A stretch of 64,000 nucleotides of DNA from Heteronotia binoei (GCF_032191835.1 NC_083227.1:22382001-22446000), one strand, 5' to 3'. Counted from the stretch's first letter, positions 2,662-60,021 are shown. Program-made: numbers and translations. The notes: a model not told the origin generated them from the letters alone.

Positions 2662-2696
2662 CTGGAATCAAGAAAGAAGACCATTAAAAGAACAGT

Positions 2697-22709: not shown

Positions 22710-23056
22710 GTCTAGATTTAAGCCCAGGAGCATCTTAGAGACCAAGAGTTTTGGGGTATAAGCTTCTGAGACTCAAAGAACATAAGAGAAGCCATGTTGG
22801 ATCAGGCCAGTGGACCCTCAGTCAAGCTTTTATGCAGAAAGAAGCAAGAGGGGGAGAAGGAAGATGACAGCCAGTTGCTCAGGGGCCTGATTCGTCCCCC
22901 GGACCACATGTTTGACACCCCTGATTTAGATGGTGGCCACAATCCTCCCAGCTTCTCCTCAACCAGTTATCCATTTGTGTGTGTGTTTAAGCTCCAGAAG
23001 TTTTTTCTAAATGGGTAGTGGGGTGGGCAGATGAGGCAGGGAAGTCAGATCCTCAC

Positions 23057-23890
23057 CACTTTCTCCATATGTTGTAAGGGCAACAGAGACTCATAGTGCC
23101 CCTCGCCTTCCACAAGAGGCTCAGAGAGATCACAGTCCAGCCTCAGGGGCTCTTCCTGCCGCTGCAAGAAGTCTTCAGCCAAGGCCACCGCCTGAGCACA
23201 AGTCTCAGGGCCGCCTTCCTTGACCCAGTTCTGGATTTCTGGGGGCAGGATAGTCAGGAACTGCTCCAGGATCAGCAGCTCCAGGATCTGCTCCTTGGTC
23301 CTTCTCTCGGGCTTCAGCCACTGATAGCAAAGGAACCACAGGCGACTGCACACCTCCCGTGGACCCTCAGTCTCCAGGTAGCAGAACTGCCGGAAGCGCT
23401 GGCGGCAAACCTCCACACTGACGGTCTCTTCCTCACCTGTCTCATCTTTGGCAAACACCCTGATGTCTGTCTCTGGGCCAGACAGGAGCTCGGCCAGGCG
23501 TTCACCTGTCGGCTGGTGGCTGGAGTTAGTGGCTCCTTCAAAGGGTGGCAGGAAAGGTCCAGCTTTGTCCCATGGGGAGGGCTCTGTGATTTGTGGGTTC
23601 CCCCATCCCACATGAAAGGATTGCAGCTCCTTCGAGAAATCCCGCCACCGGGTTTCCCAAGATTGTGTCAACCTCTCGTCAGCTTCCTCTTTGATTTGTG
23701 GAGGTGTCAGTTTATCTGGAAATTCCTCCATATTCCCACTCTGGATGCTGCAAGGAGTTTCTTTCACTCCTTCAGCTTCTTCTTCTGGTTTGGGACTTAC
23801 CAAGCCTTGTTCTTCTGTTTGCCCTCTAGGCTGGAGTCTGGCTTGGAACAGCAAAAATGAATTTCCCACAGTCTCTTGCTTGGCAGCCAT
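23057..23890 (-). CDS. Gene 2, first coding exon: N-terminal extension + SCAN domain (278 aa)
   Basis: SCAN motif [54 protein letters not shown]. Phase-0 donor GTG|GTGAGG. Confidence 0.9.
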
Positions 23891-32555: not shown

Positions 32556-33305
32556 ATGGCCACAGAGCTTACACACAAGCATAATGATTCCCCTAGGATT
32601 AAACTGGAAGAGCCTGATCCAACCGCCCTTGAACCAGGGGGAGGGTTGGAGTCTGATGGAAAACCCCTACATCCTGTTCAGGCCGGGAGTATCCAGGAAT
32701 TTCTCCACACCACAACACCCTCGCAGGTGAAGCAGGAACCGGATGAGGAATTACCACAGCTTTGGGAAGCCCAGTGGCAGGAGTTCCTGAAGGTGGTAGA
32801 GACTCCCCGTTCAAGGTGGGTCCACCATGCGAAGCGGCCAGAGTTGACATTGTGGGAAGATACGAAGATGATTCCAGCCCTCTGTGAAGGACAGGCCAAT
32901 GCTAATCGACTCCTTCAAAGAGAGGGCAAAGCAAAACCACTGGAAGGCCTCCTCATAATAGATGGAGGTGAGGAAGATGATAGAAAAGTGAAGGAAGAAA
33001 CCCTTGAGGAGAATCACACCAATGTGGTCCCGCAGGGCCACCAGTTCTGGCACTTCTGCTATCAGGAGGCTGAGGGTCCTCGAGAGATGTATGCCCAGCT
33101 CCGGGAATTATGTTACCAGTGGTTGGCGCCGGAGAGGCACACCAAGGAGCAGATCCTGGAGCTGGTGATCCTGGAGAAGTTCCTGGCCATCTTGCCAGCA
33201 GAGATCCAGAGCTGGGTCCGAGAAGGAGGACTGGAAAGCTCTGCCCAGGCTGTAGCGCTGGCGGAAGGCTTCCTGCTGAGGCAGCTGGACAGACCAGTAA
33301 AGCAG
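32556..33305 (+). CDS. Gene 3, first coding exon: N-terminal extension + SCAN domain (250 aa)
   Basis: SCAN motif [48 protein letters not shown]. Phase-0 donor CAG|GTGAGA. Candidate acceptors upstream at 32342 and 32550. Confidence 0.9.
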
Positions 33306-34039
33306 GTGAGAGCTTGAAAGAATACCCAAGGGCCCAGAAAAGAGCAAGAGTACAGGAGCACCTCGGAGACTAACAAAATTTGTGGCAGGGGGGAGGAGCT
33401 TTCGTGCGTCACTGCTCACTGCCTCCAATGCAGCTGGAATATGAGTCCTTCTGTCATATATTGGAAAGTGGAGTGATTTCAGATGCTGAATGACAATAGC
33501 AGGCAAATGATATTAGCAGGTGCGATTGGATTAGATGTGATCAGGAATTTTTTGAGCAGGAACACCGTTCTGGCTGGCTTGGTGCTGGGGGTGTGTGGCC
33601 TAATATGCAAATGAGTTCCTGTTTGTAGAAAAAGCCCTTAGCGAAACAATGGTGACACCAGGGGCTAGGGCCTAATATTCAAATTAGTTCCTGCTGGACT
33701 TTTTCTACTCCATGGAGGTCCCTGCCCTCTCCTGCCGCCATTCCCAAACCTCCAGGAGTTTCCCAACCTGGATCTGGCAACCCTGCTCCCCCCGCATTGC
33801 CCGCTGGTGGAGGGCAGGAAGGACCTGGCAGCCCCTGTTCTCCTTGTTTATATTTTGTTCTGTATTGAGAGCATTAAGCGAACACCTGTTGTTCTAGAGC
33901 AGGGGTGTCAAACATGTGGCCCAGGGGCCAAATCAGGCCCCCGGAGGGCTCCTATCAGACTCCTGAGCAACTGGCTCTTGTGTGCTTCTTTTGCCCTCTC
34001 TCTTGCTTTCTTCTGCATCTCAACATCTCAAGGCTTGCT

Positions 34040-35050: not shown

Positions 35051-35551
35051 GATGGGGCTCCCCATCTTGACCTGTCTCTGGAGAAACAGTCCAACGTGGA
35101 ATATACAAGCAACACACCATAGAGTTGACCACAGGGGGGAGAGTAAGCTGTGGTTCAGGAGAATGAGACTTTAGTACACCCATTTTATTCCAACAATTTA
35201 GACCTCCTCTCTTGATACCCAGGGCTCCACCAATCAGTAGATACAGAGCTTTTTTTGTCGCAGGAACTCCTTAGCATATTAGGCTACACCCACCTGATGT
35301 AAGCAATCCTTCAAGAGCTTACAAGGCTCTTCTTACAGGGCCTGCTGTAAGCTCCAGGAGGATTGGCTACATCAGGGGTGTGTGGCCTAATATGCAAAGG
35401 AGTTCCTGCGACAAAAAAAGCCCTAGTTATACACATTCCAGGCTCTGCCACTGCAGTACCAGCTCCCAGAGTGTCAGTCAGCATCCAGTTTCTCCCCTCC
35501 AACATGGCTTTCCCAGCCCCCTTTCCCAGACCTGAACAGGATCCTCTTTGC

Positions 35552-37580: not shown

Positions 37581-38932
37581 TCTCTAGGGCCATCCTAATC
37601 AGAGTTATCACTCTTCCAAGCTCCTTGAAGTCAGTGGGCTTAGAAGGAAACAGCTTTGGTTAGGGGTGCCTGGCGATATTCCCTCTAAGCTGCAGAGTCT
37701 TGTGAGCAAAAATTCCACTTTGTGAGCTCCTGGCATTAAAGTTGTGAGCTCCTGACATTAAAGTTGTGAGCTACTGCATAAATTATTGTGCTCTGGGGCC
37801 ATTTTTTCCTGAGCTAGGACAAAAATGTGTGAGCTGGAAGCTAAAAATCTGTGAGCTAGCTCACGCTAACTCAGCTTAGAGGGAACACTGGTGCCTGGTA
37901 AGTTTCCTGCCCAGGGCTTTTTTTGTAGCAGGAACTCCTTTGCATATTAGACCACACACCCCTGAGGTAGCCAGTCCTCCAAGAGTTTAAAGTAGGCCTT
38001 GTACTCCGTATAAACTCTTGGAGGACTGGCTACATCAGTGGGGTTTAGCTTAATATGCAAAGGCGTTCCTGCTACAAAAAAAACCCTGCCCATCTTTAAC
38101 TAAGGAGAGGCAGTCATCTAATTTTTTTGTCCTCAGTGTCCCTCATCTGGAAAATGGGTGTATTGATTGGGTTGCCTGTGACCAGTTCTCCATATAGCAT
38201 TTTTAGTTGTTCCTGGAATCACTGTGCATAGAAACTGAGAGATGAATTTGTAGGGGCAGATGTTGCGGTGTCATGATAGGTAATTGCAGGTCTTGAATTC
38301 AACAGGAGCACAGCTCCTGAACCCTTCCAAAAGTTCCCAAGGTGCAGTTGCATGACAATTCCTGGATTAGGAGAGCAGCCGACCAGCCAGCCAGCAGGGG
38401 CTTTGTCACCACCACCCCCCACAGCCCTCATTAACCTCTGGAGAAGCCCCCACCTCCCTTTCTCCAATTCTTATGTGATTTTGGATGGCGGGTGGCTTCC
38501 TGGCCTTTTGACTGGGCGGTCGGTGGCCATGGAAAGCCCCTAGCAAGTGAGGCCTGCTTGGGCTGGCTGGATCTCTAGCCAGCCCAAGCAGGCCTTGCTC
38601 GCTCACGGCTCTCCTTTCCTGCATCGGGTTGCTTTTGGCTGGGGGGGGCATATGCTAATGAGTTATGCTAATGATCGCCGCCTGTTTTTCTACAAAATGA
38701 CTCCTGGGTAACTGTGATTGGCTCCATCTTTTGAGGGGGGAGCCATTTTGTAGCTGGCCCCGCATTTGGGAGAAGCCTTCAAAGAGCAGCTCCGCCACCG
38801 AGGAGGACCCTCTTTGCAACTGGCTCCAGCTGGTGAACTATGGTGTTTTAAAAAAAAGCTCTCTCTAATCTCATGTCTTGTATGTACTGTTGTAGAGAAC
38901 GATCTCAAGCAGGAATTGTGTCTTTGTTCCAG

Positions 38933-39723
38933 GAGGTGGACCACTGAGAGAAGGTGGGAAGCTTTTGCAGGGGGAAGATTCCAAAGCTGCGCGTCGACAT
39001 GGAACGCTTCCAGAAAGAGGACAGAACGGAAATCAGTCAGAAATTGAGAGGTTACGGGAAAATAACTTGGAAGAGATGGTGGATATTTGGGAGACAGGCT
39101 GGAACGAAACCAGCCGTCGGCGAAAAATCCATCAGGAGACTACTCCAGAAATACGTGCTGAGAGTTGTGAGAACTTAGGCCCCGTCTCAGTCTTGACAAA
39201 GCGCAAGAGGATTGAAACGGGCGAGAAGCTCCATATCTGCTCAGAGTGTGGGAAAAGCTTCAGCCGAAGGTCGGACCTCATCAGGCACCAAAGGATCCAT
39301 ACGGGGGAAAAGCCTCACAAATGCTTCGACTGTGGGAAAAGCTTCTGCCAGAGGTCGCAGCTCCTTGGGCATCAGCGGACGCACACGGGAGAAAAGCCGT
39401 ATGTGTGCCTGGCCTGCGGGAAAAGCTTCGCCCACCACTCGACCTTCATCGCCCACAAGAGGACCCACACGGGGGAGAAGCCGTACAAGTGCTTGGCGTG
39501 CGAGAAGAGCTTCGGCAACCGCTCGGTCTTGATCAAGCACGAAAGGATCCACACCGGCGAGAAGCCGTACCAGTGCTCCGAGTGCGGGAAGCGCTTTAGC
39601 AACCGGACTGGTGTGTTGAAACATGAGAAGACCCACCAGAAGGAGAAGGCCCGTGGAGGCCCAGGCCGTGGGAAAGACATCCGCTTCTTCAGTCACGAAC
39701 ACAAAAGTGTTGGCAGAGACTGA
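38933..39723 (+). CDS. Gene 3, terminal exon: 5 C2H2 fingers
   Basis: Five canonical fingers. Phase-1 acceptor tgtgtctttgttccag|GA, in frame with ORF 38965-39723. Confidence 0.9.
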
Positions 39724-42700: not shown

Positions 42701-45231
42701 GTATAATTTTTACGGTCTTCTGTTGTGTTGCAAAGCTGATTTTTTTAAAGAAAAAAATTACAATAGTACTGCCCTATAGTGCTGGGACAAAAATAAAGGT
42801 GATAGGGATGCCGCCCTCCAGGTAGGATCTGGGGATCCCCTGGAATTGCAGCTCGTCTCCAGATGACATTGATCCGTTCCCCTGGAGAAAATGGATGCTT
42901 TGGAGGGTGCACTCTGTGGCATTGTGCCCCACTAAGGTTTCTGTCTTCCCCAGGCTCCACCAGGGCCAGATTAACAATTAGGCCAAGTAGGCACTGGCCT
43001 ATGGGTCCCCACGCCTTTAGGGGCTCTAGGACGGCTCCCCCCGCCCCGGTTTTCCCTCTGCTTGCAGCCCTCCCAGCCTGCACACACTGAGCTGCTCTTT
43101 GCCCGACTTGCCTGGTGCGGCTGCCGCTGGCATCGTCACCAAGTTTCCCTCTCTCTGCCTGTCCCCCGCAGCTTTGTCAGAGGGGCTTTCGAGAAGATGC
43201 CTGCAGGCTGCAGCGGGGCTCCAACTCTGAGATAATTTGCAAGGCCCCCCTAGAATTCTGAATGCCTACGGGCCTCCACAGGGTTGAATCTGGCACTGGG
43301 CTCCACCCCCACATCTCCAGGAGTTTCCCAACCTGGATCTGGCAACAGGACAGGCCTAATTTTGGGCAGGAGCTCACAGGACCGGAGCTCTGGAACCTCT
43401 AAATCAGGGGTGTTGAACTCATGAGGGCTGGATCTGACATAAATGAGACCTTGAGGGGCCGGGCCATGTGTGTACCTATTTAAGATTAGGTAGCAGAGAT
43501 ATAAATTTTATAAAGAACACAAACACAAATATATATTTTTTTAAAAACTTAAAACATTCTTAAAACGTTAGTGCTCATTGGTCTTAAAGGTGCTTTCGTT
43601 GTATTTCTCCCATGGGATTCAGCGAATGGGGCAAAGGAAGCTCTGGTTCTTTCCTTCCTTCCCCAGGGACTGGGGGTGGGTGGGGAGCCTCAGTCAATAG
43701 AAGGAAAAGAGGCTTGGCTCTGTAGCTCTGTTGTGCGATTGAGAGCCTGGCAAAGCAAGCTATTCCTCCCCACTTCCTCCCCAAAGGAGGAGCCTCTGCT
43801 AATGGAAAAAATAGAGGTTTTGTTCTTTAGCTCCTGTGCAATTGAGCAAGCCTTGCAAAGTGAGCTGTTATGCAGAAGGAAGCAAGAGAGAGGGAGAAGG
43901 AAGTAGATGACAGCCAGTAACTCGGGGTCTGATAGAAGCCCTCCGAGGGCCTGATTCAGCCCCCGAATTGCATGTTTGACACCCCTGCTCTAAATTGTAT
44001 TATGCTCTTTCTTTCTTATCCTCCCCCCCCCCCCAAAAATACTTGCTTCTGGGCTTCATTGTTCAACCCCCCTGTGAGAATTTTGCTGAACTTTTAAGGT
44101 TTGACAAACTTTCCCATATTCCCTCCCCCGCACACAAAAAATGGGAAAATAACCCAAATATATAAAGCAGACAGTTGGAAATCTTCCTCATGCCACTGTG
44201 GTCACCTGGGAGAAAGCAATTTAAAAAGTATGATGGGAGTCAGGTTTTATTATAACAATTATAATTCAAGAAGCATTTGAAGGCAGATGCTGAGCTGATA
44301 TAATTTAGTACACCTTCTGGTAATGTCAGGGGATGTGTGACATATGCAAATGAATTGTGCCAGTGAGCTCCAGCACCTCTTTTTTTCTACAAAATGACCC
44401 ATGGTAGGAAAGACCTGGCACCCACTGTTCTTCTTCTTGTTGATATTTTGTACTTATTTGTTTTTCCTTTCTTTAATCAATTTCGGGCTTTTGCGGGTAG
44501 GGTAGGTTTTGTTGCCTATCGCTGCTTTGTTTCTTCAGTCCCATCACCCCCACCCCTCTTTCCCAGTTTCTGTCCCTATGTTTTTGATGAACGTTCAGTC
44601 TTGGAAACAGTTTTATTAATAATGGAAAATTAAGATGTGTAGTGTTTCCAATTAGTGTAAGGGTTGCCAAGTCCAATTCAAGAACTATCTGGAGACTTTT
44701 GAGTGGAGCCAGGAGACTTTGGGGGTGGAGCCAGGAGCAAGGGTGTGACAAGCCTAACTGAACTCCAAAGGGAGTTCTGGCCTTACATCTAAAGGGACCG
44801 CACACCTTTTCAATGCCTTCCTTCCATAGGAAATAACAGGAGCACCTTCTTTTGGGGCTCATAGAATTGGACCCCCTGGTCCAATCTTTTTGAAACTTGG
44901 GGGATATTTTGGGGAGAGGCACTGGAAGCTATACGGAAAATATGGTGCCTCTACCTCAAAAAACAGCCCCCCCAGAAACCCGCAGATCAATTCTCCATTA
45001 TCTATGGGAATAAGTTTCCATAGGGAACAATAGCGTTCCCAGCAGACATTTCCCTCCCTTCGCCTCCGCCCCGCTTTCTGATGACCCTGAGGATTAGCAA
45101 CCCTAATTCGCGTCCATTTTTCTAAAAAAAATTATTAAACGGATGCAGTTACCCTGCTGTGTCCTATACAGTTCGAGGAAATGCTTCTCTTCACTCCTCG
45201 GGAGGGGGGAGGTGTCGGGTTATTCCAGGGA

Positions 45232-45247
45232 ACTACATTTCCCAGAA
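45232..45247 (+). promoter_or_regulatory. ZNF143/THAP11-type promoter motif ACTACATTTCCCAGAA (module A)
   Basis: Matches the ACTACAnnTCCCA motif known from ZNF143(Staf)/THAP11-HCFC1 promoters. CpG-retaining context. Confidence 0.7.
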
Positions 45248-45343
45248 GGCCTTGCGAACAGCAGGGGCTCCCCTTCTGCTGGTGGACCGCGCGGAAGGGT
45301 TTTAGGTTTGTTTGTTTTTAAATATTGAGGCGGAGAAGCAAAA

Positions 45344-45433
45344 ATGGGAGCCGTGGAATCTAGCAGCGCTCCTCGTCTTCCTCCTTTGCCCCGGCTGGAG
45401 GGAGAATCCGGTTTCTGCACCGTTGTAGGAAAG
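45344..45433 (+). CDS. Gene 4, module A exon 1 (MGAVESSSAPRLPPLPRLEGESGFCTVVGK)
   Basis: ATG ~100 nt downstream of the ACTACATTTCCCAGAA motif. Phase-0 donor GGAAAG|GTGAGC. Paralogous to 49253-49372 and 59941-60021. Confidence 0.55.
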
Positions 45434-45669
45434 GTGAGCCGAGCATTTCCTAAAAGAGATCATTTGCAAAGAGATAGATCCTGGTGAGCAGCCATGTTGG
45501 TCTGAAGCAACAGGACAAAGTAGGAGTTCAGTAGCACCTTTAAGACCAACAAAGGTTTATTCAGGATGGAAGCTTTCGTATGCATGCATGCCTCAGCAGA
45601 AAGTGGAATGGGGCAAAGTAAACAACGCTACTTGTTCTCGGTTTAACCCAGACTGCAGGAACAATAGAG

Positions 45670-46176
45670 CAGAGGTGGCCAAACAGCGGCTCGGGAGCCA
45701 GCGTGGCTCTGGAAGCCCCACCGCCCCATCAGCCAGCTTGGAGAAGGCATTTCTCTCTTTAAATCACTTATCCAAGCAACCAGTGGCCAAATGACATGCA
45801 TTTAAAGTTAAAGTTGCTTTTATCAAAGTTTTCAGGTTTTCACGGCTGGTAACATCATTAGGGTTTGTAAAATCTTTCGGGCTCAAGTGCCGTGTTCTAC
45901 TGGAGAAAGTTTTTCTTCCAGACGTTTCGTTCTCGGCTGCGGAGAACATCCTTAGTGGCGGAGGATGTTCTCCGCAGCCGAGAACGAAACGTCTGGAAGA
46001 AAAACTTTCTCCAGTAGAACACGGCACTTGAGCCCGAAAGATTCTACAAACCCTAATAAAGTTGCTTTCTTTTCATCTCTTCTTACCCAATTTATTTGCC
46101 TTTCTGTTTTGCGGCTCTCAAGCGTCTGACATTTATTGTATGTGGCTCTTATGTTAAGCAAGTCTGGCCACCCCTG
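45670..46176. mobile_element. hAT MITE (CAG(A/G)GGTGGCCAAAC family) hosting a Penelope insertion
   Basis: TSD caatagag/caataaag. Related copies at ~16030-16328 and 30020-30335. Confidence 0.75.
45821..46057. mobile_element. Penelope-like element: tail-to-tail inverted pLTR fragment
   Basis: 96-bp inverted arms (45857-45952 and 45962-46057, one mismatch) and a 12-bp TSD TAAAGTTGCTTT. 3' end ccagccgtgaaaacc on the minus strand, with hammerhead-like core motifs. Confidence 0.75.
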
Positions 46177-46726
46177 CAATAAAGATGATGATACTGGATT
46201 TATGATATTGGATTTATAACCCACCCTCCATTCTGAATTTCAGAGTCTCAGAACCACTCACAATCTCCTTCACCTCCATTCCCATAACAGACACCCTGTG
46301 AGGTGGGGGAGGCAGAGAGGGCTCTCACAGCAGCCGCCATTTTAAGGACAACTCCTACAAGAGCTATGACCCAAGGCCATTCCAGCAGGTGCAAGTGGAG
46401 GAGGGGGGAATCAAACCCGGTTCTCTCAAATAAGAGGCCGCACATTTTACAGCAAGTTGGCTCTCAGAGCAATTAAACAGACTGCATTTATTTCCTTGTG
46501 ACACTCTCACCATCATTCTCCAATTCTGCCTTTGTTGTTTTCCCATGCAGACGCTATCCAGACCAAATGTTCTTTCAATTTGTTAATTCCAACTATTTTG
46601 CTGTTGGATTCTAACTTTATACCACTTTGCATTCTGAACCACTGCCCACCAGCTATATGTACCACAGCCCACCAGCTCACTGCACCCCATTTCACTGCAC
46701 CCCATTTCATTGTCTGATGAAGGTGC

Positions 46727-47048
46727 TTGTTGTTGTTGTTGTTCAGTCACACAGTTGAGTCCGACTCTTTGCAGCCCCATGGACCAAGTCACGCCAGGCC
46801 CTCCTGTCTTCCACCATCCTCTGAAGTCTGCTCAAATTCGTGTTTATTACATCAGTAACGCTGTCCAGCCATCTCATCTTTTGCCACCCCCTTCTTCTTT
46901 TGCCTTCTGTCTTTCCCAGCATCAGGGTCTTCTCCCTTCTCATTTGGTGGCCAAAGTATTTGAGCTTCAGCATCTGACCTTCCAGGGAACAGTCAGAGTT
47001 GTTTTCCCTTAGGACAGACTGATTTGATTTTCTTGCCGTCCAAGGACT
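46727..47048 (-). mobile_element. RTE-BovB LINE 3' end
   Basis: LKLKYFGHQMRR..KTLMLGKTEGKRRRGWQKMRWLDSVTD..EDRRAWRDLVHG, with a (CAA)n tail. Confidence 0.9.
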
Positions 47049-47234
47049 GGACTCCTACTTCGTTCATTTGCAAGGAGGGAAGAGCAAATCCAGGTGAAGG
47101 GGAGTGGAAGAAAAGGAAGAGGGGGAGCATCCAGACACAGAGAAATCTAATTTCTCCAGTAAGCGTGCTGTACATACTTTCCAGCTACAAGACGTGGTTA
47201 GGTTTGTCACAGCAAGTTAAGTCCCTTCTAGGTC

Positions 47235-47730
47235 ATTCTAGATTAGTTTAGTTTATTTGATTTATATCCTGCCCTCCCCGCCGAAGCAAGCTCAGGGTGG
47301 CTCACAATACATAATAAAGTAACAATAAAAACAGTTAATTTAAACATTTAGATTAAAGCAATCTGAAACAGTTTGGTGCTAATATCATACAATTTAAAGA
47401 TGGCATTCAGTGTTCTTAAACATCCATTTAGATCTAATATCTCAGTTGAAAAGCTAATTGAAATAATATCCTCTTGCAGGCCTTGCGGAATTTGGCAAGG
47501 TCCCGCAAGGCTCCAACCTCAGGCAGTTGGTTCCACCAATGGGGGGCGGCGATTGAGAAGGCTCTTTCTTCAGTCTTGCCTCCCTCAGCCCGGGGATGAT
47601 CGATAGTGTTCCTGACCTGAGTACCCTCTGGGGAACATGTGGGGAGAGACGGTCCCTAAGGTAGGCAGGTCCTTGGCCATGTAGGACTTTAAAGGTAACA
47701 ACCAGCACCTTGTAGCGAATCTGGTATACC
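47235..47730 (-). mobile_element. L2 LINE 3' fragment
   Basis: YQIRYKVLVVTFKVLHGQGPAYLRDRLSP plus an L2-type tail (gggcaggatataaatcaaataaa). Confidence 0.8.
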
Positions 47731-48596
47731 ATGGGGTGATTAAACAGCTACCATCCAGTTCAAGAAACCTTCATATGTTGATTGTAATTTGTACAGTGCC
47801 ATTCTGTGCAGAATTGCTCCAGACCAAGAGCAGCCCCAACACCTGCTGTTTTTTCAAAATGCAAGTGTTGTAGTTTCTGTCTCCAGGCAAGAGCAACTTT
47901 CTGTAGTCACAGAGGGAGAGCTGTGTCAATCGACTGCTGCAAAATTACACAGAAGATCTGTGCATGAGCAGTGGGGCCGGTGGGGGATGGGGAATGCTTC
48001 TTTTTTCAGCCCCTCCAGTGTGTTCCCTGAAACCGGGCTGGACTTCCCTTTTATTCGTAACACCTGGACGGACCCCCAGATGGATTCAACAGGCTTTCTT
48101 GCCTGCTCTTCTTGGGCCCTCTGAGATGGCTGCTCTCTTAGCTGGCCATTTTGACATTTAATTGGACTGGACCAAGAGTAGCCTGATTATATGCAATTTT
48201 CTGAATTTGTATTTCTTGGAAATTTTCAATGTATTATAACCCGGGCTTCTTTTGTAGCAGAAACTCTTTTGCATAGTAGGCCACACACCCCTGATGTAGC
48301 CAATCCTCCTGGAGCTTACAGGGCTCTTAGTACAGGGCCTACTATAAGCTCCAGGAGGATTGGCTAAATCAGGGGTCTGTGGCCTAATATGCAAAGGAGT
48401 TCCTACGACAAAAAAAAAGCCCTGATTTATCAAGCCAACAAAAAAAATATCAAGCCAAAAAAGTTAATGGAATTTTCCTTGCTACCGGTTTGATGTCTGG
48501 CATTCTTTTAATCAACTGAGTGGGTGATAAGATCCTTCTTCTTGAAACTCAGGTACAGGAATAGATGATCAAGCAGGCCCTATTTTCCTCTTTCAG

Positions 48597-48726
48597 AGAT
48601 CCCGAGTGTCCTTTGAGGAGGTAGCTGTTTCCTTCACGGAGGAGGAATGGGCTCTGCTGGATCCAGGCCAAAGAAAGGTCTTCTGGGAAATAATGGAAGA
48701 AAATTATGAGACGGTGGCCTCTCTGG
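48597..48726 (+). CDS. KRAB-A exon, module A ([43 protein letters not shown])
   Basis: Clear KRAB-A consensus. Acceptor tattttcctctttcag and donor CTGG|gtaagg. 130 nt, phase 0 to 1. Confidence 0.85.
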
Positions 48727-49184
48727 GTAAGGCTCTTTCTCCTTTTATTATGAACATGGCAGAGAAGGGAGGGGGTGGCATCTTCCTTGACCCTCTTGGA
48801 TTTAAGAACATACTTTCGCACTCCCCCTCCTTGTTGTTCAGCTTCCCCTTAGTGACAAAATGTTCTTAGGGTAGGAAGTGTAAAGGCTTTGGGTTGCTGC
48901 TATGAGTTGAGTGTTGCATTGATCCTGAAGAGATCACTGATGAAAGGGGTTTGATAACACAAGAAAGGAGGGTTGAAGAAGAAGACAACTGCAGATTTAT
49001 ACCCCGCCCTTCTTTCTGAATCGGAGACTCAGAGCAGCTTACAATCTTCTCCTCACCCACAACAAACACCCTGTGAGGTGGGTGGGGCTGAGGGGGCTCA
49101 GGAAGCTGCCCCAGAAAGTGGTAAATAAGCATGTTCCTCAATACATAGTTGTTTTCTTCTGTTTGGGTGTTGATGTTGCAGGGG

Positions 49185-49200
49185 ACTACATTTCCCAGAA
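49185..49200 (+). promoter_or_regulatory. ZNF143/THAP11-type motif (module B)
   Basis: Identical 16-mer upstream of exon 1B. Confidence 0.65.
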
Positions 49201-49252
49201 AGAACTGCAAGCGCCAGAAGGGTCATACCTGCTTTTCCCAGGTGTCCATGGT

Positions 49253-49372
49253 ATGGTTCTTCCTCATGAAGGATGCGGAAATGTTTGGGATCTGCAGTTC
49301 CGCAGGGCCTCTCTTCTTTCTTGTTTCCCCCAGCTGGAAGGAGAATTTGGGTCTTGCACATCTGCAGGAAAG
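49253..49372 (+). CDS. Gene 4, module B exon 1 (MVLPHEG...QLEGEFGSCTSAGK; may be partly or wholly UTR)
   Basis: Same motif + GGAAAG|GTGAG donor. Open in phase 0 from ATG 49253. More diverged than the A and C copies. Confidence 0.45.
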
Positions 49373-50409
49373 GTGAGTTTTATCTGGAGCTCTTGGGCAA
49401 GAACAGGGGAGGGAGAGAAGATATGTGTGAAGAGGAGTGGAGGAGGAAGAGCTGACTGAAGAGAATCGCTGCTGTGGAGGTTGGGTGCTTTTGTATCCGC
49501 TCCCTACAATCAGCCTGGACTTCGTTTTATTTTTAACATCCAGACAGACCCTTGGTCTAATCCAACTGGGTTCATTGCCCGTTCAAACTGGCCTTTGTAG
49601 CTTGCTTCATTCTCCATTTTGTTTTTCCTATGCTCTGCGGGCTAACCTCAAAAGATGCATTGGGCCATATTCTGCTCCTATGATGGAAGTATTTTAAACA
49701 CCTACTGTTGCTTCTTCTAGAGCAGGGGTTCTTCACCTGGGATGGATTTCAGGGGGCCTTGAGCTTGATTGAGAAACAACTTACATTTTTGTTTTCCCTT
49801 CCTGAAAGTTAGCATTTTCTTCAATGGTGACTGAAGGCAATGAACAACAGTTGTTGTAGAAGTGCATGTGACTTTGTCATCAGTAGGAATAACATGGTTT
49901 CGTAGCACATTGTGTTGTTGCAGATGTGTTGAGATATCATCTACACTAATTAAAAAAAACATTTTGAAGAGGGGTCTATGTGCTTCATGGGAATGCCAAA
50001 GAGGCTCAGGGTACACGAAGGGTTAAGGCCTCCTGCTCTAGAGTGATTCCAATGAGCCTCTCCCTCAAGAACATCTCTGAATTGAAAACCCCAAGGATCA
50101 CATTGCTTTGTTAGGTCAAAAATGAACAAAAACCATTGAGGAAGAATCAACATGGATTGTGAATGGGGACATCTTGTCTCACTAACATGTTAAAAGTTCT
50201 TTGAGGGGGTGAACAGGGCTTTTTTTTGATAGCAGGAACTCCTTTGCATATTAGGCCACACCCCCTGATGTAGCCAATCCTCCAAGAGCTTTCAGGGTTC
50301 TTAGTGCAGGGCCTACGGTAAGCTCTTGGGGGATTGGCTACATCAGGGTGTGGGTGGCCTAATATGCAAAGGAGTTCCTACTACCAAAAAAAGCTTGGGG
50401 GGGTGAACA

Positions 50410-51045
50410 AACTTGTGGTCCAGAGTGACCCAATAGATATAGTTTGCCTAAACTTCCAGAAACCTTTTAATAAAGTTCCTCATCAAAGGCTCCAGAGTAA
50501 ACTCAGCAGACCTGGAATATGAGGACAAGTCCTCTTTTGGATTAAAAACTGGTTAATTAACAGGAAAGAACAGTGAGTCTAAATGGGCAGTTTTCACAGT
50601 GGAAGGTGGTAAGGTGTGGGGAACCGCTGGGTCCAGTGCTTTTTTAACTTTTTAATTAATGATTTGGATCTGAGAGTAAGCAGTGAAGTGGCTAGGTTTC
50701 CGAATGACACTAAATTGTTCAGGGTGGTGAGAACCAGGGAGGATTGTGAGGCTCCCCCAACGGATCTGTTGAGTCTGAGCAAGTTGGCAATAACATGGCA
50801 AATAAGGTTCAACATGGGCACATGCAAAGTAAGGCACACTGGAGCCAAAAATCCTAACTTTGAATTCACAATGATGGGGTTTGAACTGGTAGAAAGTGTC
50901 TAAGAGAAAGCTTGCAGTTGTGCTAGATAACTCACTGAAAATGTTGACTCAGTGTGCAATGGCAAAAAAAAAGGGCCAATGCTATGCTGGGGATTATTAG
51001 ATAGGGAACTGAAAACAAATCAGTCAATATCATAATGTCCTGTAT
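50410..51045 (+). mobile_element. CR1 reverse transcriptase fragment (degenerate)
   Basis: DIVCLNFQKPFNKVPH and FLINDLDLRVSSEVARFPNDTKLF (decayed FADD motif). Confidence 0.85.
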
Positions 51046-51049
51046 AACC

Positions 51050-51625
51050 TATGACCTAACAACTGGCTGCTGGTCGCATACCGGGTTCGGTACAAAGTGC
51101 TGGTTATTGCCATTAAAGCCCTATATGGTCGAGGGCCTGCCTACCTGAGGGACTGTCTCTCCCCATACGAACCCCAGAGAGCACTGAGGTCAGTGGGAAA
51201 GAACCAGCTGAACATCCCTGGGCCGAGGGAGGCCAAATTGAAGAACACAAGGGAACGGGCCTTCTCTGTCGTAGCTCCACACCTGTGGAATCAACTTCCG
51301 GATGAAGTGCGGGCCCTGCAGAGTCTTGACCAATTCCGCAGGGCCTGCAAGACTACTCTTTTTAAGATGGCCTTCACTGAATGCTGAGTTAATGATAGAT
51401 TCGCTGCTGTTGTATTCTGCCATCAATTTATTAAAAACCTGAAATTTAGCACCATAAATGTTAATTTTAATTGGAATGTTGATTTAAACAATGGTTTTAT
51501 AATGTAGTATTTATTGAATTATATGATTTTATTGTATTATATTGAATTAATATGTTGTGAGCCGCCCTGAGCCTGCTTTGGTGGAGAGGGCGGGATGTAA
51601 ATAAAAAGTATTATTATTATTATTA
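51050..51625 (+). mobile_element. L2 LINE 3' fragment
   Basis: KALYGRGPAYLRDCLSPYEPQRALRS..RAFSVVAPHLWNQLP plus tail. Confidence 0.85.
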
Positions 51626-52751
51626 AAGGGATCTACATGTTTTATGAGGGGGGAGCAAAATTAAAAAATGGCACCCCCTTATGGGTCATTCTGTCTTATG
51701 GTCCTATAGAATATAATGGGCTCCATTCCCAATTTGGCATCCCCCTCCGTAGGCGCCCTCTGCCCCGCCCCTAGATCCAGCCCTGCTCACAATAGAAGAA
51801 CTTGTGGACATTCAATGAAATTAATGAGAAGTAGGTTTAGAAAGATAAAAGGAAGTCCTTCTTCACCCAAAGAGTAATGAACGTGTGGAATTCTCTGCTG
51901 CAGGAAGTGGTGGTGGCCAATATTCCCTCCAAACTGTGGAGCCTTGTGAGCAAAAAAGGAAGTACTTCTTCATCCAAAGGGTGATTAACACGTGGAATTC
52001 ACTGCCACAGGAGGTGGTGGTGGCTACAAGTATGGGCAGCTTCAAGAGGGGATTGGATGGACATATAGAGCAGAGGTCCATCAGTGGCTCTTAGCCACAG
52101 CGTATTGTTGGAACTCTCTGTCTGGGGCAGTGATGCTCTGTATTCTTGGTGCTTGGGAGGGGCAACAGTGTGAGGACTTCTAGTGTCCTGGCCCCACTGA
52201 TGGACCTCCTGATGGCACCTGGGTTTTTTGGCCACTGTGTGACACAGAGTGTCAGACTGGATGAGCCATTGGCCTGATCCAACATAGCTTCTCTTTTGTT
52301 CTTAAAAACAGAACAAAATACATAAAGACTTTAATTAGGCCAATTCATGTTTACAGAGCTGGATGCAAGCTTTTGAGTAACACAGGACCCTTCTGTTGAC
52401 AAAAGTGTTCCAAGAAGAAACCACTCGAAGCACAATTTCCATGTATTTCTGGAGTTTAACATACAAAGTAGTGTTATTTCAGCTATATTGTCTATCCCCC
52501 CACCCTGCTTTTAAAGGGTCTTGACCAAGAGAAGTCCAGTTCCTTACAACAGTCCAAGTTGATGTTTCTTGGAGACTTTCAGTAGACTATACGTGTCAAA
52601 GGCTGAAAAATGAACGAATGCAATCTCCTTGCTATCAGTTTGAAGTATTGCATGTTTTAATTTGTGGACTAGCCAATGGGATTCTTCTTTCTTTCTTAAA
52701 TAGTTGGAGAAAGGAACAGATGATCCACTGGGCCATATTTTCCTCTTTCAG

Positions 52752-52881
52752 ATCTCCCCAATGTCCTTTGAGGAGGTAGCCGTGTTCTTCACGTTGGAGG
52801 AATGGGCCTTGCTGGATCCAGGACAGAAGAAACTCTACTGGGATGTTACAAAGGCAAATTATGATACTGTGGCCTCTCTTG
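52752..52881 (+). CDS. KRAB-A exon, module B ([43 protein letters not shown])
   Basis: KRAB-A consensus with an internal ATG at 52761. Acceptor tattttcctctttcag and donor CTTG|gtaagg. Phase 0 to 1. Confidence 0.9.
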
Positions 52882-55800
52882 GTAAGGATCTTTTCCATTC
52901 TGTAACATTCATCTAAGAAAAGGGAGTGGGGCATCTTCCTTTGAACCTCTTTCATTTCAGGGCACACTTTGATTTGCCACAGGGGAAAGAACAGAGTTCC
53001 CACATTTGGGGATCTTAAAGCTTCTGAGGGGGAAAAAGCATAAAGTACATTCACGTGGTAAAGAGAATCATGTTGGTGAAGAGAGCACTAATTGGAAGAA
53101 ATGGTCAGTACCCACTCAAGTTCCTGACAGGAAATCCCAACAGATTCTGCTTTATTCTTCTGCCTCTGTGTTTTGACCAAGAATGACTTTCCTGCAGTCC
53201 TTTGAGTGAGTGAGGCTGACAGGAAGAAAGGGGAAAAGGCGTCATTGATTTGACTAGGCCAGAGGAGGGGCTCTTGCTCAGTAGTGAAGTTTATGATCTA
53301 CCTATTGAAAATTCACTCCACAGCCATTGAAACGGAGATTTGGAGGAGAGACTCTTTAGTTTTACGGCTGGGGAAGCCCCTGTCTGAGGCTCTCCTGAGG
53401 CATCACCCTTTGATTGGAATTGGCTGGGATGCATGGAAAGTTCTAGAGAAAATCTTGGTGGAGGAGAACAAGAGAGTCAACTGTGAGGAAGTTGGTAGGC
53501 AGGGGACTAGAAGCCAGGCAAGAGGCGCTGCAGCCTCCGCCCTCCTTCCAGGTGATGAGTGGGGATTTTGGAGGCAGAAGTGCTTTTCCTCTTAACTGTA
53601 CGCTCTTTCTTAGCTAGTTCACAGCAGGCCCCAGTCAGTGTTCCCTCATAAGCTAGCTCACAGATTTTTAGCTTCCAGCTCACACATTTTTCTCCTAGCT
53701 CAGGAAAGATGACCCCTAATTTTTACTGTAGCTCACAACTTTAATGCCAGTAGCTCACCAAGTAGAATTTTTGCTCACAAGACTCTGCAGCTTAGAGGGA
53801 GCTTGGAAGACAAGTTGAGTTAACTCTCCGCCCTGCCTGCAGGAGTGTGTGTGTGGGGGGGAGAGGCGCGATTCAGTTCAAGCAAAACCCAATAACCAGA
53901 GATGCCCCCTGTGCTGCAGCACTCACCTCTGACCAAGGCCACCAGTGATCTGTGGCGGGGTGATGCTGGGAGTTTAACCCAGGGGACTACCTTTACTTTT
54001 AACCCTCCAATGTACTCCTCTCCCAGATTTTTCTGCAAGCCTGGGTCATTTTCCAGCTTTGTAGAAAGATGTACCTTGTCTGTTCATGTCTCCAGTCTCT
54101 AGATGTGTTTTATATTTTACTAGGAATAAGGCCCAACGGTCTCTAGAAAGAGGCTCTGGGTTGGTGCCATCCAACCTCGCTCTCTTCCCACCCACCCAAG
54201 TGAAGGCATTCACTCCCCCACCCCAAAGGGAGCTGACCTCTGCCGTCTGGAGTGCAGTTGTAATTCTGGGTGATCTCCAGCCCTCCCCGGGAGACTGAGA
54301 ACCAGAGAAAACTGCCGTGTATATAATAATATTTGATAACAGTGATCACACTATCAATTACAACGACTTAACAGCCAAAACTCACTTACTAGATCACATT
54401 TACTAAAATATGTTTGTCACTTGTTTCATAACAATAAAGTTCATAAAGTTTGGCAAAATTACATAAGAGAACAAAAAATACTTCAAATCTGCATGGAATG
54501 CTCATAACAGAGTCCAATAAATTAAATTGATTTACTCTCTCCTTGCGATTGCTGCACTATCCAACTTGTAACAAAGGCACAAACAGTCTTTATGCAGACT
54601 GAAGATGCATATAGGTGCTGAATAATTGTGTTTCTAAGTTGCAGCATGGTGACGTGCTTCCTTAGTTCAATCTTCACGTGTTTCGAAGTGACCTTCACAC
54701 GTAACGTTTATTCTGGAACTGAAATAACATATTTCAGTAAAACGCAAGATTTTTTAAGCGTTTCTTTTCCTATTCTGTTTTATGTGTTCCCTGAACAAAC
54801 GCCAGAAAATGTACTAATCTTAGTGTGATTTCAAGATCAACTTTCTGCAACAGAAGCAAGAAATCTGCCTCTTCCTTTGGTCATCTGTTTCTCCTTTCCC
54901 AGCTCATTCTGGTCTGTGTTTAAATATTGCTGAGGTTTTTAGGACTGAACTGGATAGTCCATGCAAGTCCAATCTCATCAGATCTCGGAAGTTTAGGGCC
55001 AAGCCTGGCAAATATTTGGGTGGGATACCTCCAAGGTAAACCAGGGGCAGGACACAGAGCAGGGGTGAGGAACCTTCATCTCGAGGGCAGTATATGGTCC
55101 TCAAGGTCACTTGGTGTGGCCCTTGGGGATTGCTGGACAGATACATAGATTGCCATGTGGCAGCCTCCCTGGGGCCTGGCTAGCCAGCGAGGATCATGGG
55201 GCCCAGCCACTCAGTGCAGCAGCTTCCCCGGGGCCAGGCAGGGATCACAGGGCCCAGATGTACTGTGCAGCAGCCTCCCTGGGGCCTGACTGGCTGGCCA
55301 GAATTGCTGCAGGGCCTGGAAAAGTTACTGTCACAGTTCAGTTTGCACTTGATTATCCCAGATGGTGTGGCCTAATGTGCTAATGACTGTGTGACCTAAT
55401 ATTAGGGGATGTGGTCTAATATGCTACTGAGTTCCTACTGGGCTTTTTCTACAAAAAAAGCCCTGGACCTACCTATTTGCCTAGGGTGGTGGGCTGTATG
55501 TGTGTGTCAGATTAGGCTCTCCCCACATAACTTCAAATAGAAGGACACTTATTTGCATTAATTTTGCTGGCCTGAATCATTCTCCCTCGGCGGAACACTG
55601 TTTTTTAAGTTGATAATTTTTTATGGCCCGCGAATGATGTTTTAAATATCCATATGGCCCTTGGCAGAAAAAAGGTTCCCCACCCCTGACATAGAGACAG
55701 GCAATAGCAAGCTACCTCTCCTCTCTGAAATGTTCAGGTCCACTAGGGGTCACCAGAAGTCAAACCAGAGGTTTTTCCAGGCCCCACATTCTCCTGATAG

Positions 55801-55930
55801 AAAATAACATTCACTACTCACTCTAACTATTAACTGGCTTATGTACCTGCTGATTCTTAATGCTTTGTGAGTGTGAGTGTATTATCTAAATAAATAAATG
55901 AATTACTAGATTTCTGTCTCTCTTCTGCAG

Positions 55931-57837
55931 TTGTAGATGTGACGAAGATGCGTCATGAGAAGGAATCAGGAAGGAGACTTGTGGGAAAAGACAGCAGTCT
56001 GCAGGTGGAAGCAAAATCTGGAGATCAAGTGGCCCCAAAGAGATATTGCAGAAGAAAAAGGGAAATAAAACAAAAGCAAAAGGAAGAATATACCTGTCAG
56101 AGCAGAAATAAGCCTGAGGTATCAGCCCAAGATGAAACAGGCAAGAGAAAGACAAGGTCTAAGGGTGTCATGAACCAGAGAGGGTTCAGCTCCAAATGCA
56201 GTGTTAAAACATATCAGAATGCTACAACATGCTGGAAAAGGTATAAATGTGTGGAATGTGGGAAGTGCTTCCATTGGAGCAGTGCAAGAAGTAGGCGTCA
56301 AAGGATTCACATGAAGGAAGAGCCATATAAATGCTTGGAGTGTAGAAAGTGCTCTCAGAAGGGTGAGCTAACTGTACATCAAAGGTGTCACACAAAAGAG
56401 AAGCCATATAAATGTGTGGACTGTGGAAAGTGCTTCTTTCAGAGACACCACCTAACTGTACATCAAAGGATTCATACAGGGGAGAAGCCTTATAAATGCT
56501 TGGAGTGTGGAAAGTGCTTCTCTAGCAGTAGCAACCTAAAAACACATCAAGAGATTCATACTGGGAAGAAGCCATATAAATGTTTGGAGTGTGGCAAGTG
56601 CTTCCCTCAGATTGGACGCCTAAAAGCACATCAAAGGGTTCATACTGGGGAGAAGCCATATGAATGCTTAATGTGTGGAAAGTGCTTCTCTAACAGTGGC
56701 AACCTAAAAACACATCAAGAGATTCATACTGGGAAGAAGCCATATAAATGTTTGGAGTGTGGAAAGTGCTTCCCTCAGATTGGACGCCTAAAAGCACATC
56801 AAAGGGTTCATACAGGGGAGAAGCCTTATAAATGCTTGGAGTGTGGAAAGTGCTTCTCTAGCAGTAGCAGCCTAAAAAAACATCAAGAGATTCATACTGG
56901 GAAGAAGCCATATAAATGTTTGGAGTGTGGAAAGTGCTTCCGTCAGATTGGACGCCTAAAAGCACATCAAAGGGTTCATACTGGGGAGAAGCCATATGAA
57001 TGCTTGGAGTGTGGAAGGTGCTTCTCTAACAGTGGCAACCTAAACAAACATCAAAGGATTCATACTGGGACGAGGCCATATGAATGTTTGGAGTGTGGAA
57101 AGTGCTTTCATCACAATGGTGACCTAACTAAACATCAAAGGATTCATACAGGGGAGAAGCCTTATGAATGCTTGGAGTGTGGAAATTGCTTCTCTCGCAG
57201 TGGCTTCCTAAAGAAACACCAAATGATTCATACAGGGGAGAAGCCATTTAAATGCTTGGAATGTGGGAAGTGCTTTTCTCGGACTGACTGCCTAAGACTA
57301 CATCAGAGGATTCATACTGGGGAGAAGCCATATAAATGCTTGGAGTGTGGGAAATGCTTCTCTCGCAATAGTCACCTAAAGACACATGAAACGATTCATA
57401 CTGGGGAGAAACCATACAAATGCTTTGAGTGTGGAAAGTGCTTCTCTTTGAAATCCAGCTTAACTACACATCAAAAGACTCATACTGGGGAAAAACCATA
57501 CAAATGCTTGGAGTGTGGAAAGTGCTTCACTTTGAACATTGGCCTTACTTCACATCATAGGACTCACACAGGGGAGAAACCATATAAATGCTTGAGGTGT
57601 GGAAAGTGTTTCTCTCACAGTAATGCCCTAAGGATACATCAAAATAGTCATACAGGGGTAAAGCCATATAAATGCGCGGAGTGTGGGAAATACTTCTCTC
57701 AGAATGCGCACCTAACTATACATAAAAAAATTCATACTAGAGAGAAGCCATATAAATGCTTCGAGTGTGGAAAGTGCTATTCTCGGAAAGACTGCTTCAG
57801 AGCACATCAAAAGAGTCATGCTGAGGAGAAGCAATAG
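55931..57837 (+). CDS. Gene 4, terminal exon: 19 C2H2 fingers (first two degenerate, 17 canonical)
   Basis: ORF 55939-57837 with CLECGKCF...HTGEKPY repeats. Phase-1 acceptor tttctgtctctcttctgcag|TT, compatible with both KRAB exons. Confidence 0.95.
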
Positions 57838-59822: not shown

Positions 59823-59838
59823 ACTACATTTCCCAGAA
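59823..59838 (+). promoter_or_regulatory. ZNF143/THAP11-type motif (module C)
   Basis: Identical 16-mer upstream of exon 1C. CpG-rich context from 59750 to 60310. Confidence 0.7.
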
Positions 59839-59940
59839 AGCCGTGCGAGGGACAGTGCAAGTCAGTCCTGCCTTTTGCAGGTGGGCAGCCGGAGAGGGTT
59901 TTTTAAAATGACTGAGAGGGAACAGCAACTGTAGGAGGCG

Positions 59941-60021
59941 ATGGCATCCACCAGCGCTCCTCGCTTGCCTCCTTTGCCCCGGCGAGAGGGAGGATCCGGC
60001 GTCTGCACTTTTGCAGGAAAG
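59941..60021 (+). CDS. Module C exon 1 (MASTSAPRLPPLPRREGGSGVCTFAGK) of a gene presumably continuing beyond the window
   Basis: Paralogue of exon 1A. Phase-0 donor GGAAAG|GTGAGT. No KRAB exon seen downstream within the window. Confidence 0.5.

What the first reader, a model, noticed from the sequence alone, without database searches (positions are those of the whole stretch)
45232..57837. Two promoter+exon1+KRAB cassettes share one 19-finger exon (variable N-terminus / constant DNA-binding exon)
Seen: module A (motif 45232, exon 45344-45433, KRAB 48597-48726) and module B (motif 49185, exon 49253-49372, KRAB 52752-52881) are paralogous, including the intron sequence flanking each KRAB exon. 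Module A has no finger exon of its own, because module B begins only ~460 bp after KRAB-A(A). Both KRAB exons are open, keep canonical splice sites and end in phase 1, so each joins the exon at 55931 in frame (~708 and ~718 aa). Splicing KRAB(A) to KRAB(B) instead reads D-L-P-N-V-L-stop, giving a KRAB-only product or an NMD target. Inference: alternative promoters could attach different KRAB effector domains to the same DNA-binding array, a two-cassette analogue of protocadherin/UGT1A organisation.
Basis: partly seen in the sequence, partly recalled or inferred. Interest (0 to 1): 0.75.

Follow-up and report, generated by a model that had tools for sequence, protein, structure and literature searches.

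The report
Gecko zinc-finger gene with two KRABs
The two "promoter + exon 1 + KRAB" modules are most likely joined in series in one gecko gene for a zinc-finger repressor with two KRAB domains, because the second "promoter" has become an in-frame internal exon; other geckos have similar predicted genes, so it is a neat but fairly ordinary case.

Summary
Both KRAB exons are good Pfam KRAB boxes, and the two modules are paralogous.

It defines a 191-nt exon, 49182-49372. KRAB-A ends in phase 1, and 1+191 nt restores phase 0 into KRAB-B and then the finger exon. That gives one open frame of 815 aa with two KRAB boxes.

The same five-exon layout occurs in predicted proteins and loci of Heteronotia, Gekko and Sphaerodactylus:
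- Seven copies of the internal exon keep the AG acceptor. Six are 191 nt and one is 185 nt, and none has a stop in the used frame.
- True first exons of the same sequence type vary in length, and two of four carry stops.
- Modules A and C sit in CpG-rich DNA. Module B is at background CpG level.
- KRAB-A evolves under purifying selection.

The modules are therefore most likely in series, not alternatives in the protocadherin/UGT1A manner. An internal promoter at B is not excluded.

The scan had not noted this arrangement before.

The parts
45232..45245 (+). M4/SBS-type promoter motif ACTACATTTCCCAG of the gene (module A), inside a CpG-rich stretch at about 45000-46000
   Evidence: Sequence. 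CpG o/e is 0.68-0.70 against a window background of 0.25. The motif definition ACTAYRNNNCCCR, with its peak about -89 from the TSS, is from PMC5006282.
45344..45433 (+). Coding part of exon 1 (30 codons, ATG at 45344, phase 0 at the donor). The transcription start is not mapped.
   Evidence: There is an in-frame stop between the motif and the ATG, so the upstream part is 5'UTR. Homologous N-terminal peptides start RefSeq models P0128 and P0122.
48597..48726 (+).
   Evidence: Pfam KRAB 66.4 bits. Splice sites. dN/dS is 0.15-0.49 against gecko paralogues.
48727..49181 (+). Intron 2 (455 nt), ending in a pyrimidine-rich tract and an AG at 49180-49181. It contains a SINE copy at about 48956-49111.
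   Evidence: The acceptor and about 35 nt upstream are conserved in 7 of 7 internal copies.
49182..49372 (+). Internal linker exon (191 nt, phase 1 to 0). It derives from a duplicated promoter motif + 5'UTR + exon 1.
   Evidence: Length is 191 nt in 6 of 7 copies and 185 nt in one. The used frame has no stops. The exon is translated in gene models P0123, P0125, P0128, P0129, P0130 and P0131. CpG o/e is 0.20.
52752..52881 (+).
   Evidence: Pfam KRAB 68.1 bits. dN/dS is 0.06-0.39.
55931..57837 (+). Last coding exon: a 104-aa linker, 2 degenerate and 17 canonical C2H2 fingers, and the stop TAG at 57835-57837
   Evidence: The linker has homologues only in gecko proteins.
59823..60021 (+). First module of the next gene in the cluster (module C): M4 motif at 59823, ATG at 59941, donor after 60021. 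Its KRAB exon lies beyond the window.
   Evidence: CpG o/e is 0.73.

Best explanation
Window 45.2-57.8 kb holds one five-exon gene of a gecko subfamily of KRAB zinc-finger genes that carry two KRAB boxes in tandem. Transcription starts at the CpG-rich M4-motif promoter near 45.3 kb.

The proposed splicing order is:
1. Exon 1 (ATG at 45344).
2. KRAB box 1 (48597-48726).
3. A 191-nt linker exon (49182-49372).
4. KRAB box 2 (52752-52881).
5. The finger exon (55931-57837).

This gives one open frame of 816 codons including the stop, an 815-aa protein. The protein reads: short N-terminal peptide, KRAB, a 64-residue probably disordered linker, KRAB, a 104-residue spacer, then 19 finger units.

The linker exon is a fossil. 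An ancestral unit of [promoter motif + 5'UTR + exon 1] plus [KRAB exon] was duplicated in tandem. The second copy gained or kept an AG acceptor just before the motif. The duplicated unit adds 191+130 = 321 nt, exactly 107 codons, so the duplication was in frame.

Shown here: the anatomy, the conserved frame and splice sites, selection on both KRAB boxes, and the loss of the CpG footprint at the second motif.

Inferred, not shown: that the transcript is made as drawn, and that both KRAB boxes recruit TRIM28/KAP1-type corepressors.
For: (1) Frame.
- The AG at 49180-49181 gives a 191-nt exon.
- KRAB-A leaves 1 nt, and 1+191 = 64 codons.
- Each exon is open in the frame required.

(2) Gene models.
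- A search with the unique linker of the finger exon found only gecko proteins.
- A second search, with the two-KRAB N-terminal region of P0125, found further gecko models with the same layout.
- Six predicted proteins read KRAB, a stretch of about 64 aa, KRAB, then fingers: H. binoei XP_060098705.1 (P0125) and P0128, G. japonicus XP_015284758.1 (P0123) and P0129, and S. townsendi P0130 and P0131.

(3) Conserved exon.
- In loci L001-L005 the internal exon has the same AG acceptor in 7 of 7 copies.
- The six plus-strand copies all have the donor GTGAGT. The seventh, on the minus strand of L003, also ends in GT.
- Length is 191 nt in 6 copies and 185 nt in 1.

(4) Control.
- The 7 internal copies span a tree length of 1.22 substitutions/site with one 6-nt indel.
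- The 4 first-exon copies of the same sequence type span 1.10 with at least 6 indel events. Their motif-to-donor lengths are 202, 199, 173 and 167 nt, and modules A and C have in-frame stops.
- Stops in the used frame number 0 in 7 copies, against 4 and 4 in the other two frames.

(5) CpG o/e around the motif.
- First modules score 0.45-0.73. In the window, A is 0.68 and C is 0.73.
- Internal copies score 0.20-0.39, and the window copy is 0.20. One exception, L004, scores 0.57.
- The window background is 0.25.

(6) Selection. dN/dS is 0.15-0.49 for KRAB1 and 0.06-0.39 for KRAB2.

(7) Relationships. Module A is 76% identical to module C but 58% to B. This fits A and C being first modules of neighbouring genes and B a second module.

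(8) Structure. AlphaFold2 of paralogue P0128:1-215 gives pLDDT 73-79 for both KRAB boxes and below 50 for the linker.
Against:
- The gene models are Gnomon predictions, and I could not see whether RNA supports them.
- The linker exon has dN/dS of 0.48-1.17. Only its frame and length look constrained, not its residues.
- Its M4 motif is a perfect 14/14 match in the window copy, perfect in two others and one mismatch off in two more. This hints at a function at the DNA level.
- No protein with this window's own finger exon exists in the protein collections, so this locus has no public model of its own.
- The structural model is low-confidence overall (mean pLDDT 51, 7-row alignment).
Confidence: 0.7

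Rival explanations
1. There are two active promoters, at about 45.3 kb and about 49.2 kb. Each drives its own exon 1 and KRAB exon, and each KRAB exon is spliced directly to the shared finger exon. The result is two alternative single-KRAB proteins of 708 and 718 aa.
For: - Both routes are in frame, and all splice sites are canonical.
- The M4 motif at 49185 is a perfect match.
- Skipping [linker + KRAB2] or [KRAB1 + linker] removes 321 nt and keeps the frame, by arithmetic.
- KRAB-B has an in-exon Met that could start a promoter-B product.
Against: - KRAB-B and the linker exon both have conserved strong acceptors. A transcript from promoter A would be expected to include them. Variable first exons of protocadherin/UGT1A type have no acceptor.
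- Length and frame are conserved only in the internal copies.
- There is no CpG-island footprint at module B.
- The canonical start Met of exon 1 is lost in the window and L002 internal copies.
- An out-of-frame ATG lies at 49248.
- Every related gene model that contains both KRAB modules joins them in series.
Confidence: 0.12
2. Module A is a dead remnant of a neighbouring gene that lost its finger exon. Alternatively the whole locus is an unexpressed pseudogene, and the in-frame fit is chance.
For: - No public protein model covers this locus.
- Intron 1 is filled with repeats.
- KRAB-A has Val where KRAB-B has Met.
Against: - All five exons are open, with canonical splice sites.
- KRAB-A scores 66 bits against Pfam KRAB.
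- It shows dN/dS of 0.24-0.29 against its H. binoei paralogues.
- The promoter region keeps a CpG-rich footprint.
- The same layout is kept in three gecko genera.
Confidence: 0.08
3. Assembly artefact: a finger exon belonging to module A was collapsed or dropped between 48726 and 49185.
For: Tandem zinc-finger clusters are prone to collapse. The gap between KRAB-A and the module-B motif is only 455 nt.
Against: - The window has no N.
- The same KRAB1, short intron, linker exon order is seen in independent assemblies of Gekko japonicus (846-nt intron) and Sphaerodactylus, and at two other H. binoei loci.
Confidence: 0.03

Closest known systems
Human double-KRAB zinc-finger proteins ZNF274 and ZNF333
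   Same: Both have two KRAB boxes in one polypeptide, N-terminal to a C2H2 array. For ZNF274 both boxes bind KAP1 in vitro (PMC2999557). ZNF333 was described as a double-KRAB gene by Tian et al. 2002, cited in PMC8479281.
   Different: The two ZNF274 KRAB regions lie about 190 residues apart (aa 2-90 and 278-366). From my own knowledge, a SCAN domain lies between them. Here the two boxes are 64 residues apart. They are joined by an exon that is a translated copy of a promoter motif, 5'UTR and first exon. The family is restricted, as far as seen, to geckos. No homology of the duplication event is implied.
RefSeq predicted proteins XP_060098705.1 (Heteronotia binoei, 'zinc finger protein 14 homolog') and XP_015284758.1 (Gekko japonicus, 'zinc finger protein 331-like')
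   Same: They have the same exon order and phases, a homologous linker exon and a homologous spacer before the fingers.
   Different: They are paralogues, not this locus. The finger exons are 57-60% identical at protein level. The P0125 model extends its first exon through the motif and carries a doubtful 3' tail.
Variable-first-exon clusters (clustered protocadherins, UGT1A)
   Same: Several 5' modules, each with a promoter-type motif, lie upstream of shared 3' coding sequence.
   Different: In those clusters each variable exon is a first exon without an acceptor and has its own active promoter. Here the downstream module has conserved acceptors, an in-frame length and no CpG footprint. This comparison rests on my own knowledge of those systems.
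Double-KRAB gene models in turtles and other squamates (P0138 Pelodiscus, P0144 Emydura, P0151 Liasis, P0152 Pogona, P0155 Sceloporus)
   Same: The spacer between the two KRAB boxes repeats the protein's own N-terminal peptide. A [first exon + KRAB exon] unit was therefore also duplicated in series.
   Different: The spacers are different and shorter, with no M4-motif translation. These are probably independent duplications.

Membership tests
KRAB-C2H2 zinc-finger gene | A KRAB A box encoded on its own exon | tested here: met
   There are two such exons, scoring 66.4 and 68.1 bits against Pfam PF01352.
KRAB-C2H2 zinc-finger gene | A tandem C2H2 finger array on a single large 3' exon | tested here: met
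   There are 17 canonical and 2 degenerate fingers in 55931-57837.
KRAB-C2H2 zinc-finger gene | KRAB recruits TRIM28/KAP1 and represses transcription | not testable with these tools
   Sequence only. KRAB1 keeps I-M-E-E-N-Y where KRAB2 has V-T-K-A-N-Y.
Gecko tandem double-KRAB subfamily (KRAB1, linker exon, KRAB2, fingers) | The order KRAB1, motif-bearing linker exon, KRAB2, homologous spacer, fingers, all on one strand | tested here: met
   Searches show the same order in L001-L005 and the window.
Gecko tandem double-KRAB subfamily (KRAB1, linker exon, KRAB2, fingers) | A linker exon of 191 nt bounded by AG and GT, open, taking phase 1 to phase 0 | tested here: met
   Window 49182-49372.
Gecko tandem double-KRAB subfamily (KRAB1, linker exon, KRAB2, fingers) | Transcripts that join the five exons | not testable with these tools
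Only predicted models of paralogues are available.
Variable-first-exon cluster (protocadherin/UGT1A type) | Each variable unit is a first exon with no 3' splice acceptor | tested here: not met
   KRAB-A, KRAB-B and the module-B exon all have conserved acceptors.
Variable-first-exon cluster (protocadherin/UGT1A type) | Each unit has its own active promoter | tested here: inconclusive
   The motif is present at both units. The CpG footprint is present only at A (0.68 against 0.20). There are no TSS data.
Variable-first-exon cluster (protocadherin/UGT1A type) | One variable unit per mRNA, spliced to the constant exon | not testable with these tools
   There are no RNA data.

The most novel reading that the evidence does not exclude
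The 191-nt exon is dual-use. In transcripts from the upstream promoter it is a coding linker between two KRAB boxes. In some tissues its intact M4 motif still acts as an internal promoter that yields a KRAB2-only protein on the same finger array. One locus would then make a two-KRAB and a one-KRAB repressor with identical DNA specificity. In addition, the two in-frame 321-nt exon pairs could be skipped, giving further effector variants.
Probability: 0.25. Interest if true: 0.6.

Novelty: new member of a known kind. Interest (0 to 1): 0.4.

Why it matters
This corrects an attractive but probably wrong reading, protocadherin-like choice of repressor domains. The simpler reading is a serial duplication that gave a zinc-finger repressor two KRAB boxes.

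It gives a clean example of a duplicated promoter and 5'UTR becoming a protein-coding linker. The event is still legible, because the translated M4 motif survives as the first residues of the exon and the CpG footprint has decayed.

Tandem KRAB boxes recur in predicted reptile genes. I found no paper describing them in reptiles. If both boxes bind corepressor, these proteins could serve as natural tests of KRAB dosage or cooperativity.

Tried and rejected
- A word search with the whole finger exon returned only generic zinc-finger proteins at 61% identity or less, with no model of this locus.
- A word search with the linker region, restricted to lengths of 349-1110 aa, found nothing.
- An exact look-up of the finger-exon ORF found nothing, and so did an exact look-up of P0130.
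- I tested whether L005 (Gekko), which has a SCAN-ZNF gene followed by a double-KRAB gene, is the orthologue of the window. The SCAN exon is only 48% identical, so I make no orthology claim.
- I considered in-situ duplication of module B as the origin of module A and rejected it, because A is much closer to C than to B.
- I found no KRAB exon for module C inside the window.
Exons were searched one at a time by reference. The fold used stored paralogue proteins. The only joins were made inside a local script, to check reading frames.
Full report
OBSERVATION. I read 45.1-49.5 kb and 52.4-58.3 kb and checked every coordinate by script.
- Exon 1A (45344-45433, 90 nt) starts with ATG and ends at a GTGAGC donor.
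- KRAB-A (48597-48726) and KRAB-B (52752-52881) are both 130 nt. Both follow an almost identical ...ttttcctctttcag acceptor and end at GTAAGG.
- Exon 1B (49253-49372) is 120 nt.
- The finger exon begins after a cag at 55931 and stops at 57835-57837.
- A to fingers gives 708 aa and B to fingers gives 718 aa.
- Both KRAB exons are strong Pfam KRAB hits (66.4 and 68.1 bits against a cut-off of 20.4).
- The two KRAB exons are 77.7% identical, with alignable flanks of about 150 nt upstream and 90 nt downstream.
- The finger exon holds 17 canonical and 2 degenerate fingers.

SURROUNDINGS. The window is a zinc-finger cluster.
- There are three SCAN-ZNF genes. Two lie on the minus strand: fingers 1700-2671 with SCAN 9352-10203, and fingers 18377-19171 with SCAN 23048-23890. 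One lies on the plus strand: SCAN 32556-33314 with fingers 38965-39720.
- A third module lies at 59.8-60.0 kb: motif at 59823, ATG at 59941, donor after 60021.
- Module A is 76% identical to this module C but only 58% identical to B. A is therefore not a local copy of B. A and C are the same kind of module, and B is another kind.

THE TURN. The big searches with the finger array were uninformative. An HMMER search with the non-repetitive 104-aa linker of the finger exon found seven gecko proteins and nothing else. Two of them carry two KRAB boxes in series: XP_060098705.1 of Heteronotia binoei (P0125) and XP_015284758.1 of Gekko japonicus (P0123). The 64 residues between the two boxes are a translation of an M4-type motif followed by an exon-1B-like peptide.

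In the window there is an AG at 49180-49181, preceded by a pyrimidine-rich tract and directly before GGGACTACATTTCCC. The exon 49182-49372 is 191 nt. KRAB-A leaves one base, and 1+191 is 64 codons. The frame therefore runs on into KRAB-B, which starts in phase 0, and then into the finger exon. The total is 90+130+191+130+1907 nt. That is 816 codons with the stop, an 815-aa protein with two KRAB boxes. The duplicated unit of linker exon plus KRAB exon is 321 nt, exactly 107 codons.

IS THE INTERNAL EXON REAL? A second search found more gecko models with the same layout:
- P0128 in H. binoei.
- P0129 in G. japonicus.
- P0130 and P0131 in Sphaerodactylus townsendi.
- P0135, where the same N-terminus is fused to a Harbinger-type transposase.
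- P0136 in Euleptes, where a SCAN exon is joined to the motif-bearing exon.

I fetched five double-module loci (L001-L005) and one single-module Eublepharis locus (L006) and mapped the exons. The evidence is as follows.
- Splice sites and length. Seven internal copies, including a seventh on the minus strand of L003, all have the AG acceptor at the same place. The six plus-strand copies have a GTGAGT donor, and the seventh also ends in GT. Length is 191 nt in six copies and 185 nt in one.
- Indel control. The seven internal copies have a tree length of 1.22 substitutions per site yet carry a single, in-frame indel. Four first-exon copies of the same sequence class have a tree length of 1.10 and at least six indel events. 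Their motif-to-donor lengths are 202, 199, 173 and 167 nt. Window modules A and C have in-frame stops between motif and ATG, as real 5'UTRs should.
- Stops. The used frame has no stop in any of the seven internal copies. The two other frames have four each.
- Residue constraint. dN/dS of the internal exon is 0.48-1.17, so its residues are nearly free and only the frame is kept. KRAB1 (0.15-0.49) and KRAB2 (0.06-0.39) are constrained.
- Structure. An AlphaFold2 model of paralogue P0128:1-215 has both KRAB boxes at pLDDT 73-79 and the linker below 50. This fits a flexible linker, though the model is weak overall.

IS MODULE B STILL A PROMOTER? CpG observed/expected in 500 nt round the motif is 0.45-0.73 for the six first modules examined. 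In the window, A is 0.68 and C is 0.73. Six of the seven internal copies score 0.20-0.39, and the window copy scores 0.20. The seventh, L004, scores 0.57. The window background is 0.25. The second motif therefore lies in DNA that has decayed like methylated gene body, unlike the promoters of A and C.

Against that, the motif itself is a perfect match in the window copy and in two others, and one mismatch off in two more. The M4 motif is a promoter-proximal element with a peak near -89 (PMC5006282). I therefore treat an internal, non-CpG-island promoter as possible but unsupported.

MECHANISM. Most likely (0.7), a single promoter near 45.3 kb drives a five-exon mRNA for a tandem double-KRAB zinc-finger repressor. 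The 'promoter + exon 1' of module B is a translated fossil of the duplication.
- the conserved acceptors of the linker and KRAB-B exons;
- the frame constraint that is specific to internal copies;
- the missing CpG footprint;
- the loss of the ancestral start Met in the window's internal copy;
- an out-of-frame ATG at 49248.

A dead remnant (0.08) conflicts with the intact exons and with purifying selection on KRAB-A. An assembly collapse (0.03) conflicts with the same compact layout in independent assemblies.

COMPARISON.
- Double-KRAB zinc-finger proteins are known in humans. ZNF274 has two KRAB boxes that both bind KAP1 in vitro (PMC2999557). ZNF333 is the other example (Tian et al. 2002, cited in PMC8479281).
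- Predicted double-KRAB proteins built from a duplicated first exon plus KRAB exon also occur in turtles and other squamates.
- This locus is a new member of a known kind. Its special feature is the promoter-derived linker exon.
- It fails the defining test for a protocadherin/UGT1A-type cluster, because its variable units have acceptors.

LIMITS.
- The related gene models are predictions.
- The species name Heteronotia binoei comes from an earlier scan note. It fits the nearest relatives found, but I did not verify it independently.
- This locus has no public protein model of its own.
The joins were made only inside a local script, to check frames.

Noticed in passing
window 56480-57070: Inside the finger exon a two-finger unit is repeated three times in a row. 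Its recognition helices are of the types [13 protein letters not shown] and [13 protein letters not shown]. This points to recent internal expansion of the array.
   Followed up: partly
window 1700-2671 and 9352-10203 (-); 18377-19171 and 23048-23890 (-); 32556-33314 and 38965-39720 (+): Three SCAN-domain zinc-finger genes lie upstream of the double-KRAB gene. No KRAB exon was detected for them by tblastn with the two KRAB peptides.
   Followed up: partly
window 45851-46063: A 213-nt stretch in intron 1 pairs with its own reverse complement at 93.9%, a long hairpin. It is the same object as the Penelope-like hairpin noted earlier by the scan.
   Followed up: no
window 48236-48425, with copies at about 7990-8170, 11140-11324, 17515-17710, 35248-35431, 37911-38088 and 50214-50394: A palindromic repeat of about 185 nt is present in both orientations at many sites of the window. 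It looks like a MITE-type element.
   Followed up: no
L003:6073-9106 (-), H. binoei unplaced scaffold: A neighbouring gene model (P0133, named GTF2IRD2-like) has the same exon 1, KRAB, linker-exon N-terminus, followed by fingers and a hAT-type transposase part. Its first KRAB exon has an in-frame stop in the genomic sequence.
   Followed up: no
P0135 (Sphaerodactylus townsendi): In this predicted protein the KRAB, linker exon, decayed second KRAB N-terminus is fused to a Harbinger-type transposase domain.
   Followed up: no
P0138, P0144, P0151, P0152, P0155: Predicted double-KRAB zinc-finger proteins occur in turtles, a python, Pogona and Sceloporus. Their inter-KRAB spacer repeats their own N-terminal peptide. 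Serial duplication of [first exon + KRAB exon] therefore seems recurrent in reptiles.
   Followed up: partly
window 49248-49255: Two overlapping ATGs lie in the linker exon.
   Followed up: partly
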